From assembly GCF_006345805.1 (NCBI RefSeq), contig NC_043007.1, positions 4,154,001 to 4,218,000 on the forward strand: a DNA stretch of 64,000 nt, written 5' to 3'. A program made the translations under genes and the position numbers. The notes below the pieces were generated by a model. It ran no database searches. It was not told the DNA's origin and was given only the letters and a program-made list of their open reading frames with translations. Below are positions 2,225 through 59,974 of this stretch, in pieces. Each line of letters begins with the position of its first letter. Within the stretch, counting starts at the first letter, position 1. Source of the stretch: Octopus sinensis. Lineage: Eukaryota.

Positions 2225-2750
2225 ACATGCGCTCTTGTTCACGCATGTGCACACAATCTTTTCTCTCGTACACACACATATACTTACATGCTTACGTATG
2301 AGAGGGAGCAGAATATGTGAGGAGGGGGAAGAGAGGAGGTGAAAATGTGAGAGACAGAGAGAGTGTATGGGTGCATAAAAACATGGAAAGAAAGGGGAGA
2401 TGTTAAAGAAGAGGAGGAAGAGGAGAAAGGGAGAATAATATAAGCATGAGGAGAAATACAGAGAGAAATTGAGAGGGAGAGAGAGAGATTGAGCAGGAAA
2501 GACATGTCTAGAAAGGTACCATGTTGACAACAAGTAAACTTAGAAGAAGAATAAGGAAGAAATGGAAAAAATAGGGGTAGTTGTGGGATGAGGAGGAGTA
2601 AGAAGGGAACGAAGAGCAGTGGTAGGAGGAAGAGAAAGAACTGAAGTAAAATGGAAGATGAAGGAATTTGGAACAGTAGTTGTAAGAAGAGGATGAGAAT
2701 GAAAAGTGAGAAAGGAGAGGAGCAAGGAGAGCAAGATTAATCATTTTAAG
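400..2750 (+). other. Strongly purine-skewed (A/G-rich) degenerate segment, possibly a very old LINE remnant
   Basis: About 2.3 kb dominated by A/G on + strand, interrupted by (TG)n; no intact ORF; minus-strand ORFs are F/L/S-rich artefacts of the skew. Confidence 0.3.
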
Positions 2751-6810: not shown

Positions 6811-6913
6811 TGGATGGATACTATCATGAGCTGGTTGGACAAGAGTACCAAGGCAGCTGGAGAGTTCATGTTTAATCATAAAAACTTTCAATGTAGTGCC
6901 ATAAATACACTGT

Positions 6914-7322
6914 AGGTGCAGGAGTGGCTGTGTGGTAAGTAGCTTGCTAACCAAATACATGATTCCGGGTTCAGTCCCACTGCGTGGCATCTTGGGCCAG
7001 TGCCTTCTGCTATAGCCCCGGGCCGACCAATGCCTTGTGAGTGGATTTGGTAGACGGAAACTGAAAGAAGCCTGTCGTATATATGTATATATATGTGTGT
7101 GTGTGTGTGTTTGTATGTCTGTGTTTGTCTCCCTAGCATTGCTTGACAACCGATGCTGGTGTGTTTACGTCCCTGTAACTTAGCAGTTCGGTAAGAGACC
7201 GATAGAATAAGTACTGGGCTTACAAAGAATAAGTCCCGGGATTGATTTGCTCGACTAAAGGCGGTGCTCCAGCATGGCCGCAGTCAAATGACTGAAACAA
7301 GTAAAAGAGTAAGAGTAAGAGT
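6914..7322 (+). mobile_element. Full-length tRNA/CORE-like SINE, family A
   Basis: tRNA-like head (ggctgtgtggtaag...gggttcagtccc), CORE-like cttggg..agtg, internal (TA)/(TG) tract, tail gctccagcatggccgcagtcaaatgactgaaac plus (aagagt)n; several copies in window. Confidence 0.85.
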
Positions 7323-55780: not shown

Positions 55781-55906
55781 TTTAATTTACGAATGGACTT
55801 CTGATATATTATTGGTCTCTAACTCAAATGTAACTTTGTGCATGTCTCTATGAGTTTGTCTAAATGTATAACTGGAACATTTGTTGTTGTAACCAATGGA
55901 AAGCTG

Positions 55907-56136
55907 GGCCATACATATATACATACATACGTACATACATACATACATACATACAGGCATACATACGTACATACATACATACATACATACATACATACAT
56001 ACAGGCACACACACACACATACATACATACATACATACATACACACATACATACATACATACACACATACATACACACATACATACATACATACACACAC
56101 ATACACACACACATACATACATACATACATACATAC
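55907..56136. repeat. Long (TACA)n/(CA)n microsatellite
   Basis: Direct reading. Confidence 0.95.
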
Positions 56137-56793
56137 TTTGATTAGAGGTTGTGTTAACTTCATAAAGAGATGGTTTCATCCAAGGAAGTACTGGTTCAGT
56201 ATCTAGTATTTTTGGAGAATTAATTTCCTTAAAATGATAAGTGTATAAAGATATATATATATATAAAAACATAGTTTTTATTCATATAAAGGAAGAAAAA
56301 GAAAATGGAGATTAAATGAAGTTAATAATTGTTTGTTATTAACAGCAAATTAATCACCATCCCTTACAGCTGTTTCAGTTAATACCCAGTAAATGTCAAG
56401 TAAATTAAATGACCTGAGCATAATATCTTTAGAGGGGAAAAAATATACCCTTGAATGTTTTATATGTGTATATGTATTCCTTATGGCAGACTGAATGATA
56501 CGGTTTATGATTTGTATTTTTATATGTTTGGGTGAGGGGTTTACAGGTTGATTGGAGATACGATAGAGTAGGCAGATAGAATTAGAACAATAAATGAATA
56601 AATTAAATAGAGATGATAGAAGAAATTTAAATATAAATAAGGTAAGTTTATAGTTAATAAAAGAATGGTATAAATAAAGTTATGAAAATTTGCATATATG
56701 CAAGTACGTATACATATACACACATATATATATAACTGTACATCCATATATATATATATACTTTATTTAAAGCAGCAGAAAATTCAACAAAAT

Positions 56794-56831: not shown

Positions 56832-56857
56832 TTTTATTTAACAGTATATATATATAC

Positions 56858-56892
<35 letters not shown>

Positions 56893-57049
56893 ATTAATTA
56901 ATAAGGGCAAGTGAGCCATATAGTGACCACTCTCTTATATTTATATATATATATATAAAATATTATTCGAGACAAAACCACTATTTTGCAAAACAAACAA
57001 GGAAAGACTTAATCAATACATAAATTTTAATAAATAGTCAAAAAAACCG

Positions 57050-57091
57050 CCACTACAATCGTTTCTTGTCTGATCGACAATCTTCAGGTGG
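57050..57091 (-). ncRNA. Minimal type I hammerhead ribozyme (unit 1, left arm)
   Basis: Minus: CCAC-CTGAAGA-TTGTC(gatca)GACAA-GAAA-CGATTG-TA^GTGG. Confidence 0.8.
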
Positions 57092-57139
57092 ACTTCCAAT
57101 AATTCAGTGTCAAAAATTTGACACTGAATTATTGGAAGT

Positions 57140-57182
57140 CCACCTGAAGATTGTCGATCAAGACAAGAAACGATTGTAGTGG
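57140..57182 (+). ncRNA. Minimal type I hammerhead ribozyme (unit 1, right arm)
   Basis: CCAC-CTGAAGA-TTGTC(gatcaa)GACAA-GAAA-CGATTG-TA^GTGG; full core; predicted cut after 57178 (GUA). Confidence 0.8.
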
Positions 57183-57360
57183 CGGTTTTTTTGACTATTT
57201 ATTAAAATTTATGTATTGATTAAGTCTTTCCTTGTTTGTTTTGCAAAATAGTGGTTTTGTCTCGAATAATATTTTATAATATTTTACTATAAAATCGATT
57301 TAATCCTAAATCTGATTTTTTTCCCCTGTAAATTTGGATTTATTCCCTAATATTTATTAT

Positions 57361-57457
<97 letters not shown>

Positions 57458-57615
57458 AATTAATTAATAAGGGCAAGTGAGCCATATAGTGACCACTCTC
57501 TTATATTTATATATATATATATAAAATATTATTCGAGACAAAACCACTATTTTGCAAAACAAACAAGGAAAGACTTAATCAATACATAAATTTTAATAAA
57601 TAGTCAAAAAAACCG

Positions 57616-57658
57616 CCACTACAATCGTTTCTTGTCTTGATCGACAATCTTCAGGTGG
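57616..57658 (-). ncRNA. Minimal type I hammerhead ribozyme (unit 2, left arm)
   Basis: Exact reverse complement of 57707-57749. Confidence 0.8.
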
Positions 57659-57706
57659 ACTTCCAATAATTCAGTGTCAAAAATTTGACACTGAATTATT
57701 GGAAGT

Positions 57707-57749
57707 CCACCTGAAGATTGTCGATCAAGACAAGAAACGATTGTAGTGG
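57707..57749 (+). ncRNA. Minimal type I hammerhead ribozyme (unit 2, right arm)
   Basis: Identical to 57140-57182; predicted cut after 57745. Confidence 0.8.
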
Positions 57750-58343
57750 CGGTTTTTTTGACTATTTATTAAAATTTATGTATTGATTAAGTCTTTCCTT
57801 GTTTGTTTTGCAAAATAGTGGTTTTGTCTCGAATAATATTTTATAATATTTTACTATAAAATCGATTTAATCCTAAATCTGATTTTTTTCCCCTGTAAAT
57901 TTGGATTTATTCCCTAATATTTATTATTATATATATATATATATAATATATATATATATAATATATATATAATATATAATATATAATATATATATAATAT
58001 ATATATAATATATATATATATAAATAAATATATATATAAGAAAGTGAAGTTGTAAGGTATCGCACGAGTGGAATTATATATGAAAGAAGGTTTGAAAATG
58101 CAATTTCAAAGATGTTTATTCATTGACTGGTTTCACTTTTTAGAAAAAGATTGTCAAAAGTAAAATGTAAAGCTTTGTTGTGTTAAGTACTGGTTATCAC
58201 AAAAGTATTAAAATACTTATATACATTCTTTGGTTATAATAAGAAAATGTTAAAAACAGTTTACAAGAAAGTATTTAAGAAAGTTATCAGAACGGGACTA
58301 CAAAAAGCATTTTGAGTGCAATAAAAATCTTTCATATACATAC

Positions 58344-58803: not shown

Positions 58804-58837
<34 letters not shown>

Positions 58838-59974
58838 ACCTGAACCCTTGTTCATCTTTTAATACATTCACACCTTTACCCCATTTCTTACCATTCCTCA
58901 CTCTCTCCATACACTCTCTTGTTGCTTCTATACAACTTCCCTCTCTGTTCTTCTTCATCAAGAACCCTTCCTGATACCTTGTTTCCACCCTCTTTATTTC
59001 TCTTCCAAACTCTACACTGATTACTCTCAACCAGTTATTTCCTCAGCAGCAGGAAATCTGATCTGGCCACTTTCTTCATACTCTGCCATGTCATCACTTA
59101 GCATAAATCTGCCTTCTCTCTGTAGCCCCACTCAATAATAGATGGCAATTTTAGTTTGGTGAGCTGCATGCTAACCTTATTAGTACTGGCACAATGAAAA
59201 AACTGCACCCAGCACAGTCTGCAAAGTGGTTGGCAATAGGAAGGGCATCCAACCATAGAGACTATGCCAAAATAGACATTGGAGCTCTGTGCAGTCCTCT
59301 AACCAACCAAACCATGCCAGCATAAAAGACAGTCATTAAAAGATGATGATGGTGATGATGATGATATGCAGAATGATGTAAAAGTCCTGTTTGCAGTTTG
59401 ATACTGTTTCATCCTACTAAGAACAAATGTAGCAAGAAAATTTGTTTTCAATGAGAATTGACTCTTAGAGTGCCACAACTAGGTGAGTCAGTAGTCTTGT
59501 GTCCTGCAAGCCAAAGGACAGAGAAGAGCTTGTACACTGACCAGCACTGTACCATACACTTTGCAAAATAATTCTTGGTTCACAATGGCCCAACTTTGTG
59601 AAGTTGTTCAACTTAGAAAGTAGTGGAAGCATCATACAATTACTGAATGTTCTCTTATCTCTCCAAGGTTGTAACTTAAAAAGCGATGGGCTTCACCAGG
59701 TTTATTTGTTTTATATGCATGACATGAAGACAAAGTCTTGAATGGTATTCCAAGAATTTAATGGGTAATTGGATGCTTCATTCTTGATAGAGATTTAAAT
59801 TAGTTTTGTTCAAAGAAGATAATATAAAGTAGGTTAAAGTTATACCTGTCAATCTCATCTGTGTCCATCATCTCATATTTCCTGCTTTTGAACCCCTTAT
59901 AGATTTCGATTTTTACATCTGTGATCTATTCAGTTAAGACATTCATTGATTATTTCTTTTTTATGTTATGGCAG

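What the first reader, a model, noticed from the sequence alone, without database searches (positions are those of the whole stretch)
56892..57930. Tandem of perfect palindromes carrying four intact hammerhead ribozymes (retrozyme-like architecture on both strands)
Seen: two 566/567-bp units, each with an about 162-bp-arm palindrome. Each arm holds a complete minimal type I HHR: stem I CCAC/GTGG, CUGAAGA core, stem II UUGUC/GACAA, GAAA, and a GUA cleavage site. Stem III (ACGAUUGU) is self-complementary through G-U pairs, which suits a dimeric double-hammerhead fold. Established: minimal HHRs with palindromic stem III occur in Penelope-like pLTRs and retrozymes, and tandem HHRs can release unit-length RNAs that circularise. 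Inference: transcription of either strand could release an about 567-nt non-coding monomer (plus-strand cuts after 57178 and 57745). A strand-symmetric, ribozyme-processed element of this form is not one I recognise. Near-identity of arms and units means it is very recent or artefactual.
Basis: partly seen in the sequence, partly recalled or inferred. Interest (0 to 1): 0.9.

Follow-up and report, generated by a model that had tools for sequence, protein, structure and literature searches.

The report
Hammerhead-carrying octopus retroposon, inverted and duplicated
The palindromes are real, but they are two adjacent copies of one back-to-back insertion of a young, roughly 2,000-copy mobile element of an octopus genome that carries a hammerhead-ribozyme motif, which is a known kind of element, not a new two-stranded ribozyme device.

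Summary
There are two units of 566 and 567 bp, each with a 162-nt-arm palindrome, and four complete type I hammerhead (HHR) motifs, two on each strand.

The genome matches Octopus sinensis by its assembly statistics. The arm belongs to a dispersed, non-coding retroposon of about 245 nt that I call family A. It has an HHR near its 5' end and a (TA)n tail. The exact 43-nt HHR occurs 1,607 times in the genome.

About a third of the exact HHRs I sampled lie in head-to-head inverted pairs. The centre junction of these pairs differs from locus to locus, while the two arms always share the same subfamily marker. So the palindromes are made anew at each insertion, from one template.

The tandem in the window is a later local duplication. 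It also copied 47 nt of an unrelated repeat.

All of this matches what is published for Penelope-like elements (PLEs) and their HHR-bearing non-autonomous derivatives, the non-LTR retrozymes:
- minimal HHRs with a self-complementary helix III;
- insertion into (TA)n;
- tandem and inverted insertion structures.

As RNA, the inverted dimer folds into a perfect hairpin of -271 kcal/mol that buries the HHR, so release of a 567-nt RNA from either strand is unlikely. No Rfam model recognises the motif, and I could not test catalysis.

Verdict: a new member of a known kind, of modest interest.

The parts
56845..56892 (.). (TA)n microsatellite upstream of unit 1; the kind of target the family inserts into
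   Evidence: TRF. Flanks of other copies are often (TA)n or (CA)n.
56893..56939 (+). 47-nt fragment of an unrelated low-copy repeat, carried along in the duplication (copy 1)
   Evidence: Absent from all other family copies, which begin at unit position 45-49. Found at four other loci without the HHR element.
56954..57114 (-). Left arm of unit 1: an inverted copy of the retroposon lacking the last ~60 nt of the 3' tail. Its outer end lies at the internal UUUUAUA site next to (TA)n.
57050..57091 (-). HHR motif on the - strand, with loop II 1 nt shorter. Predicted cut between 57054 and 57053.
   Evidence: reverse-strand hit 6910-6951 converted to + coordinates; sequence.
57115..57362 (+). Right arm of unit 1: a full-length family A retroposon with a 25-nt leader, HHR, body and the tail ...CCCTAATATTTATTATTA
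   Evidence: Monomer copies elsewhere start at (CT)TCAT|AATTTGACACTG and end in (TA)n.
57140..57182 (+). HHR motif on the + strand. Predicted cut after A57178.
   Evidence: The exact 43-mer occurs 1,607 times in the genome.
57363..57458 (.). (TA)n-rich tail and spacer between the two units
   Evidence: TRF.
57459..57505 (+). Second copy of the 47-nt foreign fragment
57520..57681 (-). Left arm of unit 2 (inverted copy lacking the last ~60 nt of the 3' tail)
   Evidence: I2: 162 nt, 100% complementary.
57616..57658 (-). HHR motif on the - strand. Predicted cut between 57620 and 57619.
57682..57929 (+). Right arm of unit 2 (full-length retroposon)
   Evidence: D2, offset 567.
57707..57749 (+). 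HHR motif on the + strand. Predicted cut after A57745.
57930..58039 (.). (TA)n-rich tail downstream of unit 2
   Evidence: TRF.

Best explanation
**What it is.** The locus is one insertion, later duplicated in tandem, of a young, non-coding, SINE-like retroposon that I call family A. The unit is about 245 nt and 27.5% GC.

**The unit.** It consists of a 25-30-nt leader, a minimal type I hammerhead, a body of about 170 nt and a (TA)n tail.

**How it moves (inferred).** I infer that it is mobilised in trans by the reverse transcriptase and GIY-YIG endonuclease of Penelope-like elements. These are abundant in this genome, have intact reading frames, and also end in (TA)n. On this reading family A is an animal non-LTR retrozyme or PLE parasite.

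**How the palindrome forms.**
- Shown: the palindrome is made at integration, anew at each locus, and both arms derive from one source.
- Inferred: the full copy is primed from the terminal (UA)n on a nicked (TA)n target. A second, inverted copy reaches the same 5' end and always stops at an internal UUUUAUA site. The likeliest route is that the reverse transcriptase turns back on its own cDNA at the 5' end of the template. PLE-type priming on both target strands is the alternative.

**How the tandem formed (inferred).** The 566/567-bp tandem arose afterwards by unequal exchange or slippage between the flanking (TA)n tracts.

**What the hammerhead does (inferred).** It is inherited from the PLE/retrozyme lineage. 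If active at all, it works as a dimer in head-to-tail transcripts. In this inverted copy it is locked in a perfect hairpin and is very probably silent, so the locus is a dead-on-arrival copy.
For: **Host genome.** It has 2,719,151,902 bases in 13,516 sequences, and C10 is 105.9 Mb. These figures match the O. sinensis entry in the assembly table of PMC10700109.

**Family size and age.**
- The first look found at least 1,281 candidates at 94-100% identity on many chromosomes.
- The exact 43-nt HHR occurs 1,607 times, against 0 for the control pattern.
- The 21-mer just after the cut site occurs 2,192 times.

**Two forms.** There are monomers (unit positions 224-459) and head-to-head dimers (positions 45-459).

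**Dimers are made anew at each locus.**
- The centre junction differs between loci.
- The 18 -/+ HHR pairs listed have 15 different spacings, from 70 to 115 nt (tallied).
- The outer end of the left arm is the same in all copies, at TTTTATA followed by (TA)n.

**Both arms come from one source.** A subfamily marker agrees between the arms in 17 of 17 independent dimers. Under random pairing I estimate p at about 1e-4.

**Tandems are secondary.** W1/W2 in the window and L023a-c elsewhere each share one identical centre junction and spacer. The window units also include foreign DNA.

**The hammerhead is conserved in the lineage.**
- The related family B is 78% identical to family A over the last ~143 nt of the A monomer.
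- B carries a canonical HHR at the same relative place, with different helices: GAC CUGAGGA [77-nt helix II] GAAA CGUACG UA|GUC.
- The stem I pair 1.3-2.3 is swapped between the two families (G-C against C-G).
- 27 of 53 family B arms start between -5 and +18 of the predicted cut.
- 27 of the first 100 family A copies have helix III ACAAUUGU, a perfect palindrome.

**Genomic context.**
- There are 84 HHR-descriptor hits in 285.5 kb of fetched loci, against 0.33 in shuffles. About 13 of them are in other families.
- There are at least 4,846 GIY-YIG candidates.
- Open frames of 762-883 aa, stop to stop, occur in five of the fetched loci. The one I scanned, in L032, has RVT_1 just under Pfam's cut-off (28.9 against 29.6 bits, E 1.1e-6) and GIY-YIG over it.
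- That PLE family ends in (TA)n.

**Folding.**
- The inverted dimer forms a perfect hairpin at -271 kcal/mol.
- A tandem pair forms a double hammerhead with an 8-bp helix III at -21 kcal/mol, z -2.4.

**Literature.**
- PLE insertions form partial tandems with adjacent inverted copies and prefer (TA)n (PMC8557442).
- Minimal HHRs with a palindromic helix III occur in PLE terminal repeats, and opposite-strand pairs 100-700 bp apart have been seen (PMC4209133).
- Retrozymes are PLE derivatives, and the share of solo copies per family ranges from 0 to 1 (bioRxiv 10.64898/2026.07.22.740005).
Against: - No PLE sharing the family A or B tail or its HHR was found among the 12 PLE loci fetched, which represent 3 PLE families. 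PLE dependence is therefore inferred from the insertion signature only.
- Rfam Hammerhead_1 gives no hit for family A even at E<=10. The same model scores another octopus HHR, L034:5515-5559, at 26.6 bits.
- The pair at 10.1-11.1 is U-A. Helix I has only 4 bp. The isolated motif is no more stable than shuffles (z 0.15).
- All 100 listed family A copies keep the HHR 3' half upstream of the cut site, so none starts at the cut. The RNAs that were inserted had not been cut, or had been re-ligated.
- In published PLE structures the inverted neighbour is 5'-truncated. Here it is 3'-truncated and reaches the 5' end.
- Same-strand tandems, the defining retrozyme arrangement, are rare: about 2 in 100.
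Confidence: 0.72

Rival explanations
1. The element is an ordinary retroposon as described, but its hammerhead-like motif is a catalytically dead relic, or a chance match that hitch-hiked when the family amplified. It plays no part in the element's life cycle.
For: - No Rfam hit at E<=10, although a control octopus HHR is detected.
- U10.1-A11.1 instead of G-C, and a 4-bp helix I.
- The isolated fold is not better than shuffles.
- No family A copy starts at the cut site.
- Family B short copies lack the 5' half of the HHR, yet they have higher identity (93-97%) than the long form (82-89%).
- My loose descriptor would give roughly 850 chance matches genome-wide, extrapolated.
- PLE-type minimal HHRs cleave poorly in vitro (PMC4209133).
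Against: - All core positions are intact in 1,607 copies.
- The diverged sister family B keeps a canonical core at the same place, with different helices and one compensated stem I pair.
- Helix III is self-complementary in A, in the A subfamily (ACAAUUGU) and in B (ACGUACGU).
- HHR motifs are far more frequent in the fetched loci than in shuffles of them (about 15 hits outside family A in 285.5 kb, against 0.33 expected).
Confidence: 0.2
2. One reading: a strand-symmetric retrozyme. Transcription of either strand of the tandem is cut by two same-strand hammerheads and releases a unit RNA of about 567 nt that circularises and propagates.
For: - There are two same-strand HHRs 567 nt apart on each strand.
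- Helix III suits a dimeric fold.
- Retrozyme circles of 170-400 nt and longer are documented in animals (PMC7229834).
Against: - The hairpin of -271 kcal/mol buries each HHR, and its complement is transcribed first.
- The unit contains 47 nt of foreign DNA and is found only here.
- Other copies of the family are solo or inverted, with a variable centre.
- No genomic copy has the circularly permuted or cut-site boundaries expected from such an RNA.
Confidence: 0.04
3. An assembly artefact: the palindrome is a fold-back chimera, or the tandem is a falsely duplicated haplotype.
For: - The units are identical apart from 1 nt and the (TA)n lengths.
- PLE-type structures are known to trouble assemblies (PMC8557442).
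- The 1-nt indel could be a polishing error.
Against: - Inverted pairs recur at many independent loci with different junctions.
- Similar tandems of dimer plus spacer exist elsewhere, for example the three units in L023.
- At about 330 bp the palindrome is far shorter than a long read.
- The tandem at this one locus cannot be verified without reads.
Confidence: 0.03
4. A foldback or MITE-type DNA transposon with long terminal inverted repeats that inserts at TA.
For: A palindromic structure of about 350 bp flanked by TA-rich sequence.
Against: - The element is asymmetric: the right arm runs about 60 nt beyond the left arm's end and finishes in a (TA)n tail.
- Half copies with a defined 5' end are common (11 of the 30 loci fetched).
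- The centre junction varies and sometimes carries extra bases.
- These are marks of reverse transcription, not of cut-and-paste transposition.
Confidence: 0.01

Closest known systems
Animal non-LTR retrozymes (Cervera & de la Pena 2020, PMC7229834; Li, Clavereau & Pollet 2026, bioRxiv 10.64898/2026.07.22.740005)
   Same: - Short, non-coding, AT-rich repeats of 170-400 bp, each with a type I hammerhead.
- Helix III is weak and self-complementary, suited to a dimeric mode.
[quoted passage not shown]
- Solo copies occur alongside tandems.
   Different: - Retrozymes are defined by head-to-tail tandem arrays. This family is mostly dispersed, as solo copies and head-to-head inverted dimers.
- Same-strand neighbours are rare, about 2 in 100.
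- No circular RNA has been shown for it.
- No cephalopod example came up in the papers I searched.
Penelope-like elements: minimal hammerheads in the terminal repeats, and complex tandem/inverted insertions in (TA)n (PMC4209133, PMC8557442)
   Same: - A minimal HHR with a short helix I and a palindromic helix III.
- Insertion into (TA)n.
- An inverted copy adjoining the 5' end.
- Partial tandems.
- HHR pairs on opposite strands 100-700 bp apart.
   Different: - There is no RT/GIY-YIG reading frame in the element, so it is non-autonomous.
- The inverted copy is truncated at its 3' end, not its 5' end.
- No sequence homology to a sampled PLE of this genome was found.
Schistosoma Sm-alpha, a SINE-like dispersed retroposon with a type I hammerhead (Ferbeyre et al. 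1998; recalled from my own knowledge, and cited in PMC4209133)
   Same: A high-copy, short, dispersed, non-autonomous element that carries one type I HHR per unit.
   Different: - Sm-alpha has a canonical HHR that Rfam recognises.
- I know of no systematic head-to-head dimers or (TA)n tails reported for it.
Inversions made during LINE-1 integration (twin priming), and inverted Alu pairs as sources of dsRNA (established knowledge)
   Same: - Inverted structures created during target-primed reverse transcription.
- The resulting hairpins would be dsRNA if transcribed.
   Different: - In twin priming the two segments do not overlap.
- Here both arms copy the same 170 nt and share their variants. 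That points to copying of the cDNA itself, or to two full passes over the template.

Membership tests
Hammerhead ribozyme, type I (Rfam RF00163) | Conserved core: CUGANGA, GAAA, and a UH cleavage site | tested here: met
   CUGAAGA ... GAAA ... GUA|G in all four motifs. The 43-mer is identical in 1,607 genomic copies.
Hammerhead ribozyme, type I (Rfam RF00163) | Three helices in type I order (open helix I; closed helices II and III) | tested here: met
   Helix I has 4 bp, helix II 5 bp plus a 6-nt loop, and helix III 2 bp plus a tetraloop. The minimum-energy fold of the 51-mer forms helices I and II.
Hammerhead ribozyme, type I (Rfam RF00163) | Covariance-model score at or above the gathering threshold (34 bits) | tested here: not met
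   No hit at gathering score or at E<=10 on 1,101 nt or 73 nt. As a control, another octopus HHR, L034:5515-5559, scores 26.6 bits with E 4.6e-5.
Hammerhead ribozyme, type I (Rfam RF00163) | G10.1-C11.1 pair at the foot of helix II | tested here: not met
   The pair is U-A. Natural variants at this position are known, for example a U-U in an axolotl HHR with reduced activity (PMC7229834).
Hammerhead ribozyme, type I (Rfam RF00163) | Site-specific self-cleavage | not testable with these tools
   This needs in vitro transcription of monomer, head-to-tail dimer and inverted dimer constructs.
Hammerhead ribozyme, type I (Rfam RF00163) | Evolutionary conservation of the core, with helices that vary but still pair | tested here: inconclusive
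   Sister family B keeps CUGAGGA/GAAA/GUA at the same place with different helices. The stem I pair 1.3-2.3 is G-C in A and C-G in B. The A subfamily has ACAAUUGU. Only two or three lineages are available, so the statistics are weak.
Animal non-LTR retrozyme | Head-to-tail tandem repeats of about 150-450 bp, each unit with a type I HHR | tested here: not met
   The window units are 566/567 bp. Each is an inverted dimer plus foreign DNA. Across the family, same-strand pairs are rare: spacings of 512 and 977 nt, and 331 nt.
Animal non-LTR retrozyme | Non-coding and of low GC content, without LTR, PBS or PPT | tested here: met
   GC is 27.5% for the monomer. No ORF of at least 110 aa lies in 56.8-58.1 kb. 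There are no terminal direct repeats other than the (TA)n tracts.
Animal non-LTR retrozyme | Expressed as linear and circular unit-length RNAs | not testable with these tools
Penelope-like element (autonomous) | A single ORF with a telomerase-like RT and a GIY-YIG endonuclease | tested here: not met
   tblastn of PLE proteins from this genome against the window and all family loci finds nothing in or beside the element. Open-frame PLE copies exist elsewhere in the genome.
PLE-dependent non-autonomous element | The PLE insertion signature: a (TA)n target, an inverted adjacent copy, and partial tandems | tested here: met
   compared with the description in PMC8557442.
PLE-dependent non-autonomous element | Sequence shared with the terminal repeat or 3' end of an autonomous PLE in the same genome | tested here: inconclusive
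   None was found in 12 PLE loci from 3 families. The one apparent match, L032:5071-5216, proved to be a separate family B insertion next to the PLE's (TA)n end.
Foldback / MITE DNA transposon | Symmetric terminal inverted repeats with a fixed target-site duplication | tested here: not met
   The arms are unequal, the centre is variable, and half copies with defined 5' ends are common.

The most novel reading that the evidence does not exclude
This family shows how PLE-type integration builds palindromes. One template molecule is copied twice, head to head, most simply by the reverse transcriptase turning back on its own cDNA. The turn-back copy ends by microhomology between an internal UAUA site and the (TA)n target. 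If so, the family has seeded the octopus genome with hundreds of perfect hairpin loci of about 170 bp. When transcribed, these could be substrates for the heavy A-to-I editing or the small-RNA pathways of cephalopods. Meanwhile a few head-to-tail tandems, such as a same-strand pair 331 nt apart on C1, may act as hammerhead-processed masters, possibly through circular RNA.
Probability: 0.15. Interest if true: 0.6.

Novelty: new member of a known kind. Interest (0 to 1): 0.33.

Why it matters
- **An uncatalogued family.** It adds a young, probably still active, hammerhead-bearing retroposon family of about 2,000 copies to a cephalopod genome. Such short repeats may sit among the hundreds of "unclassified SINE" families of the sister species' repeat annotation (PMC13282606), though I did not check that. 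The fetched loci show several further type I hammerhead families in this genome.
- **A data set for an open question.** How Penelope-type integration produces inverted and tandem structures at microsatellites is unresolved (PMC8557442). This family gives clean evidence on it: many independent inverted dimers with variable centres, a fixed outer end, and arms that always agree in their variants.
- **A practical warning.** A palindrome that holds ribozyme motifs on both strands need not be a device. Here it is a scar of insertion that silences the ribozyme.

Tried and rejected
- **Rfam.** I searched at gathering score over the whole window and at E<=10 over 1,101 nt and 73 nt. There was no hammerhead hit. 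The strong MIR1882/MIR161-type hits only reflect a long perfect hairpin, and I do not read them as miRNA genes.
- **Search for the autonomous partner.**
  - A GIY-YIG scan of the genome gave 4,846 candidates.
  - I fetched 12 loci, ran blastn of the monomer against them, and ran tblastn of their proteins against all family loci. No shared tail turned up.
  - The only match, in L032, is an independent family B insertion abutting the PLE's (TA)n end.
- **A corrected mistake.** I first read the family B core as CUGAGGG, which would be an A9G change. That came from dropping an alignment column. The real sequence is CUGAGGA.
- **Test for cut RNA as the template.** For family A the test was negative: 0 of 100 copies start at the cut site. 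For family B it is only suggestive: the 5' ends cluster at -5 to +18, but this may trace back to a single founder.
- **Target-site duplications.** They cannot be read because insertions sit in microsatellites. The same is reported for PLEs.
- **Pol III SINE model.** I rejected it because T7 and T6-7 runs lie inside the unit and no tRNA, 5S or 7SL match was found.
- **Pfam on six window ORFs.** No match reached a Pfam cut-off; the one hit listed, SPC22 at 18 against 25 bits, is noise. I therefore make no claim about neighbouring transposase-like fragments.
Full report
**1.

The region contains two direct repeats with offsets of 566 and 567 bp: 56881-57071/57447-57637 and 57071-57370/57638-57937. 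Both are 100% identical.

Each unit holds a palindrome:
- Unit 2 has arms 57520-57681 and 57684-57845, which are 162 nt long and 100% complementary.
- Unit 1 is the same apart from a 1-nt deletion in its left arm.

Reading the sequence, and scanning with a hammerhead descriptor that I wrote, gives exactly four motifs in the 64 kb, all in this element. They lie on the + strand at 57140-57182 and 57707-57749, and on the - strand at 57091-57050 and 57658-57616.

Dinucleotide shuffles of the window give 0.02 such hits per 64 kb, or 0.185 with looser stems.

Three caveats apply:
- Rfam finds no hammerhead at gathering score or at E<=10. It returns only generic miRNA-hairpin hits caused by the palindrome.
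- The pair at the foot of helix II is U-A, not G-C.
- The isolated motif folds no better than shuffled sequence (-7.5 kcal/mol, z 0.15).

**2. Where the window comes from**

The assembly has 2,719,151,902 bases in 13,516 sequences, and C10 is 105,892,736 bases long. These figures match the entry for the chromosome-scale Octopus sinensis assembly (13,516 scaffolds, 2,719.2 Mb, N50 105.9 Mb) in the table of PMC10700109. That assembly was built from long reads (PMC12564688).

**3. The arm is a copy of a dispersed repeat**

A search of the genome with the right arm and its tail gave at least 1,281 candidates. The 40 that were scored were 94-100% identical and lay on many chromosomes.

Copy numbers by exact match:
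- The 43-nt hammerhead occurs 786 + 821 = 1,607 times, against 0 for the control pattern.
- The 21-mer just after the cut site occurs 2,192 times.

Mapping the window unit onto 30 loci shows two forms:
- **Monomer.** It spans unit positions 224-459, that is window 57115-57350 plus the tail. It starts at (CT)TCAT|AATTTGACACTG and ends ...CCCTAATATTTATTATTA(TA)n.
- **Head-to-head dimer.** It spans positions 45-459. Its left arm is the reverse complement of positions 224 to about 402.

The first 44-48 nt of the window unit (56893-56939) are absent from every other copy. They recur at four other loci that lack the element, so they are a fragment of a different repeat. Flanks are very often (TA)n or (CA)n. 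I call this family A. It is non-coding and 27.5% GC.

**4. How the palindromes arise**

- The centre junction differs between loci. Examples are CAAA|AATTTG in the window, CAAATTATGACTTCATAATTTG, CAGTG|TCATAATTTG, left arms cut back by 20-30 nt, and junctions with extra bases.
- Among the first 100 HHR places listed there are 18 convergent -/+ pairs. Their start-to-start spacings run from 70 to 115 nt, with 15 different values.
- The outer end of the left arm, by contrast, is the same in all copies. It ends at GTCTCGAATAATATTTTATA and runs into (TA)n, whereas the right arm continues ATATTTTACTATAAAATCG... for about 60 nt more.
- The one robust subfamily marker, an extra T, agrees between the two arms in 17 of 17 independent dimers. 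With allele frequencies of about 0.3 and 0.7, I estimate that random pairing would give this with p of about 1e-4.

So the dimers are built anew at each insertion, and both arms come from one source. My inference is as follows:
- The full copy is primed from the terminal (UA)n on a nicked (TA)n target.
- The second, inverted copy arises when the reverse transcriptase turns back on its own cDNA at the 5' end of the template, or by priming on the other target strand.
- The second copy ends where an internal UAUA can pair with the (TA)n target.

The palindrome is therefore real. It is a scar of integration, not a designed unit. A foldback DNA transposon does not fit the unequal arms, the variable centre, or the many half copies.

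**5. How the tandem arose**

W1 and W2 share the same centre junction and the same foreign 47 nt. Elsewhere, L023 carries three units of dimer plus spacer, with one shared junction and two identical spacers. These are post-insertion local duplications, plausibly unequal exchange between the flanking (TA)n tracts.

Same-strand HHR neighbours are rare across the family. One search lists spacings of 512 and 977 nt, and one search lists one of 331 nt, which is a candidate head-to-tail pair. Without reads I cannot exclude that the tandem at this one locus is an assembly duplication.

**6. Is the hammerhead genuine?**

Evidence for:
- A sister family, B, has at least 1,450 candidates at 93-97% identity. 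It is 78% identical to family A over the last ~143 nt of the A monomer, and it also forms inverted dimers.
- The long form of B has at least 1,012 candidates at 82-89% identity. At the same relative place it carries a canonical hammerhead with quite different helices: GAC CUGAGGA [77-nt helix II] GAAA CGUACG UA|GUC.
- Every core position is kept. The stem I pair 1.3-2.3 is G-C in A and C-G in B. Helix III is a perfect palindrome in B (ACGUACGU).
- 27 of 100 family A copies have ACAAUUGU, also a perfect palindrome. Only 1 has the other CpG-decay product, so this is a subfamily and not random decay.
- A tandem pair of family A motifs folds into a double hammerhead with an 8-bp helix III (-21 kcal/mol, z -2.4).
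- 27 of 53 family B arms begin between -5 and +18 of the predicted cut. That would fit a cut RNA as template, but it may trace back to one founder.
- The genome is rich in such motifs. There are 84 descriptor hits in 285.5 kb of fetched loci against 0.33 in shuffles, and about 13 of them belong to other families. One of these, L034:5515-5559, is recognised by Rfam Hammerhead_1 at 26.6 bits.

Evidence against:
- The Rfam failure for family A.
- The U-A pair at 10.1-11.1 and the short helix I.
- All 100 listed family A copies keep the hammerhead's 3' half upstream of the cut site, so none starts at the cut. The inserted RNAs were uncut or re-ligated.

I put the chance that this is a true hammerhead by descent at about 0.8. 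I put the chance of measurable dimer-mode cleavage at about 0.5.

**7. Why this copy is probably silent**

The inverted dimer, folded as RNA, is a perfect hairpin at -271 kcal/mol (z -39), in which every hammerhead nucleotide pairs with the other arm. On either strand the antisense arm is transcribed first, so the ribozyme's complement is already present when the ribozyme emerges.

**8. What mobilises it**

- The genome has at least 4,846 GIY-YIG candidates.
- Open frames of 762-883 aa, stop to stop, occur in five of the fetched loci.
- The one I scanned, in L032, has RVT_1 just under Pfam's cut-off (28.9 against 29.6 bits, E 1.1e-6) and GIY-YIG over it.
- That PLE family ends in (TA)n.

The family's insertion signature is what the literature describes for PLEs and for hammerhead repeats derived from them: a (TA)n target, an adjacent inverted copy, partial tandems, and a minimal hammerhead with a self-complementary helix III (PMC8557442; PMC4209133; PMC7229834; bioRxiv 10.64898/2026.07.22.740005).

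PLE dependence therefore remains an inference.

**9. Comparison with what is known, and verdict**

The element works like an animal non-LTR retrozyme or PLE parasite, and like the SINE-like hammerhead element of schistosomes. It fails the strict retrozyme definition of head-to-tail arrays, and it fails the Rfam model. I therefore file it as a hammerhead-bearing, PLE-type non-autonomous retroposon, which is a new member of a known kind.

Opposite-strand hammerhead pairs and inverted PLE insertions are already on record. What is mildly new:
- the cephalopod host;
- the youth and uniformity of the family;
- the clean evidence that both arms of each palindrome come from one template.

My interest score is 0.33.

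Noticed in passing
window 56893-56939 and 57459-57505; L049 (G000:C11:~75140502): The 47-nt stretch ...AAGGGCAAGTGAGCCATATAGTGACCACTCTCTTATA belongs to another low-copy repeat. At one locus on the same chromosome it recurs five times, about 530 bp apart. It may be the terminus of another (TA)n-associated element.
   Followed up: partly
L050-L079 (for example L062:1352-1453, L071 - strand): Sister family B. The short form is about 260 nt, has at least 1,450 candidates, has (ATT)n, (TA)n or (CA)n tails, and also forms inverted dimers. The long non-coding form is over 1 kb, has an internal repeat of about 260 nt, and carries a canonical hammerhead with a 77-nt helix II and helix III ACGUACGU.
   Followed up: partly
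L034:5515-5559 (+): A textbook minimal type I hammerhead, CACGCG CUGAUGA GAGGU-AAAC-ACCUU GAAA CUCGAG UC CGUGUG, sits in a short repeat between two (TA)n tracts. It scores 26.6 bits on Rfam Hammerhead_1.
   Followed up: partly
L064:1277-1362 (+) and 2393-2478 (-); L012, L005, L034:81-163; L055:463-553; L060:1202-1248; L058, L059: At least five further hammerhead families lie in the flanks of the fetched loci. Several have helix II of 54-105 nt and a palindromic helix III (ACAUGUGU, ACAUAUGU, ACGAUCGU). One has the classic CAAAUA loop II. Type I hammerhead repeats thus seem abundant in this genome: 84 hits in 285.5 kb against 0.33 expected.
   Followed up: partly
L032:4040-4470: The region 3' of the ORF in an open-frame Penelope-like element (765-aa ORF with RVT_1 and GIY-YIG matches, preceded by a 466-aa ORF1) holds about seven spaced copies of TGATGACGTC, a CRE/ATF-like motif. 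The element ends in (TA)n near L032:4950 and sits in a tandem about 5.9 kb long.
   Followed up: no
G000:C1:22010471-22010835 (- strand): Two family A hammerheads lie on the same strand 331 nt apart. Both are the ACAAUUGU variant. This is a candidate head-to-tail tandem that could yield a hammerhead-bounded unit RNA. I could not fetch it.
   Followed up: no
window 56009-56136, 58804-58839 and many ORF-like runs (for example 55787-56281): The window is dense in (ACAT)n, (AC)n and (AT)n microsatellites. These create long spurious open frames of the CVCVCV or YIYIYI type.
   Followed up: no
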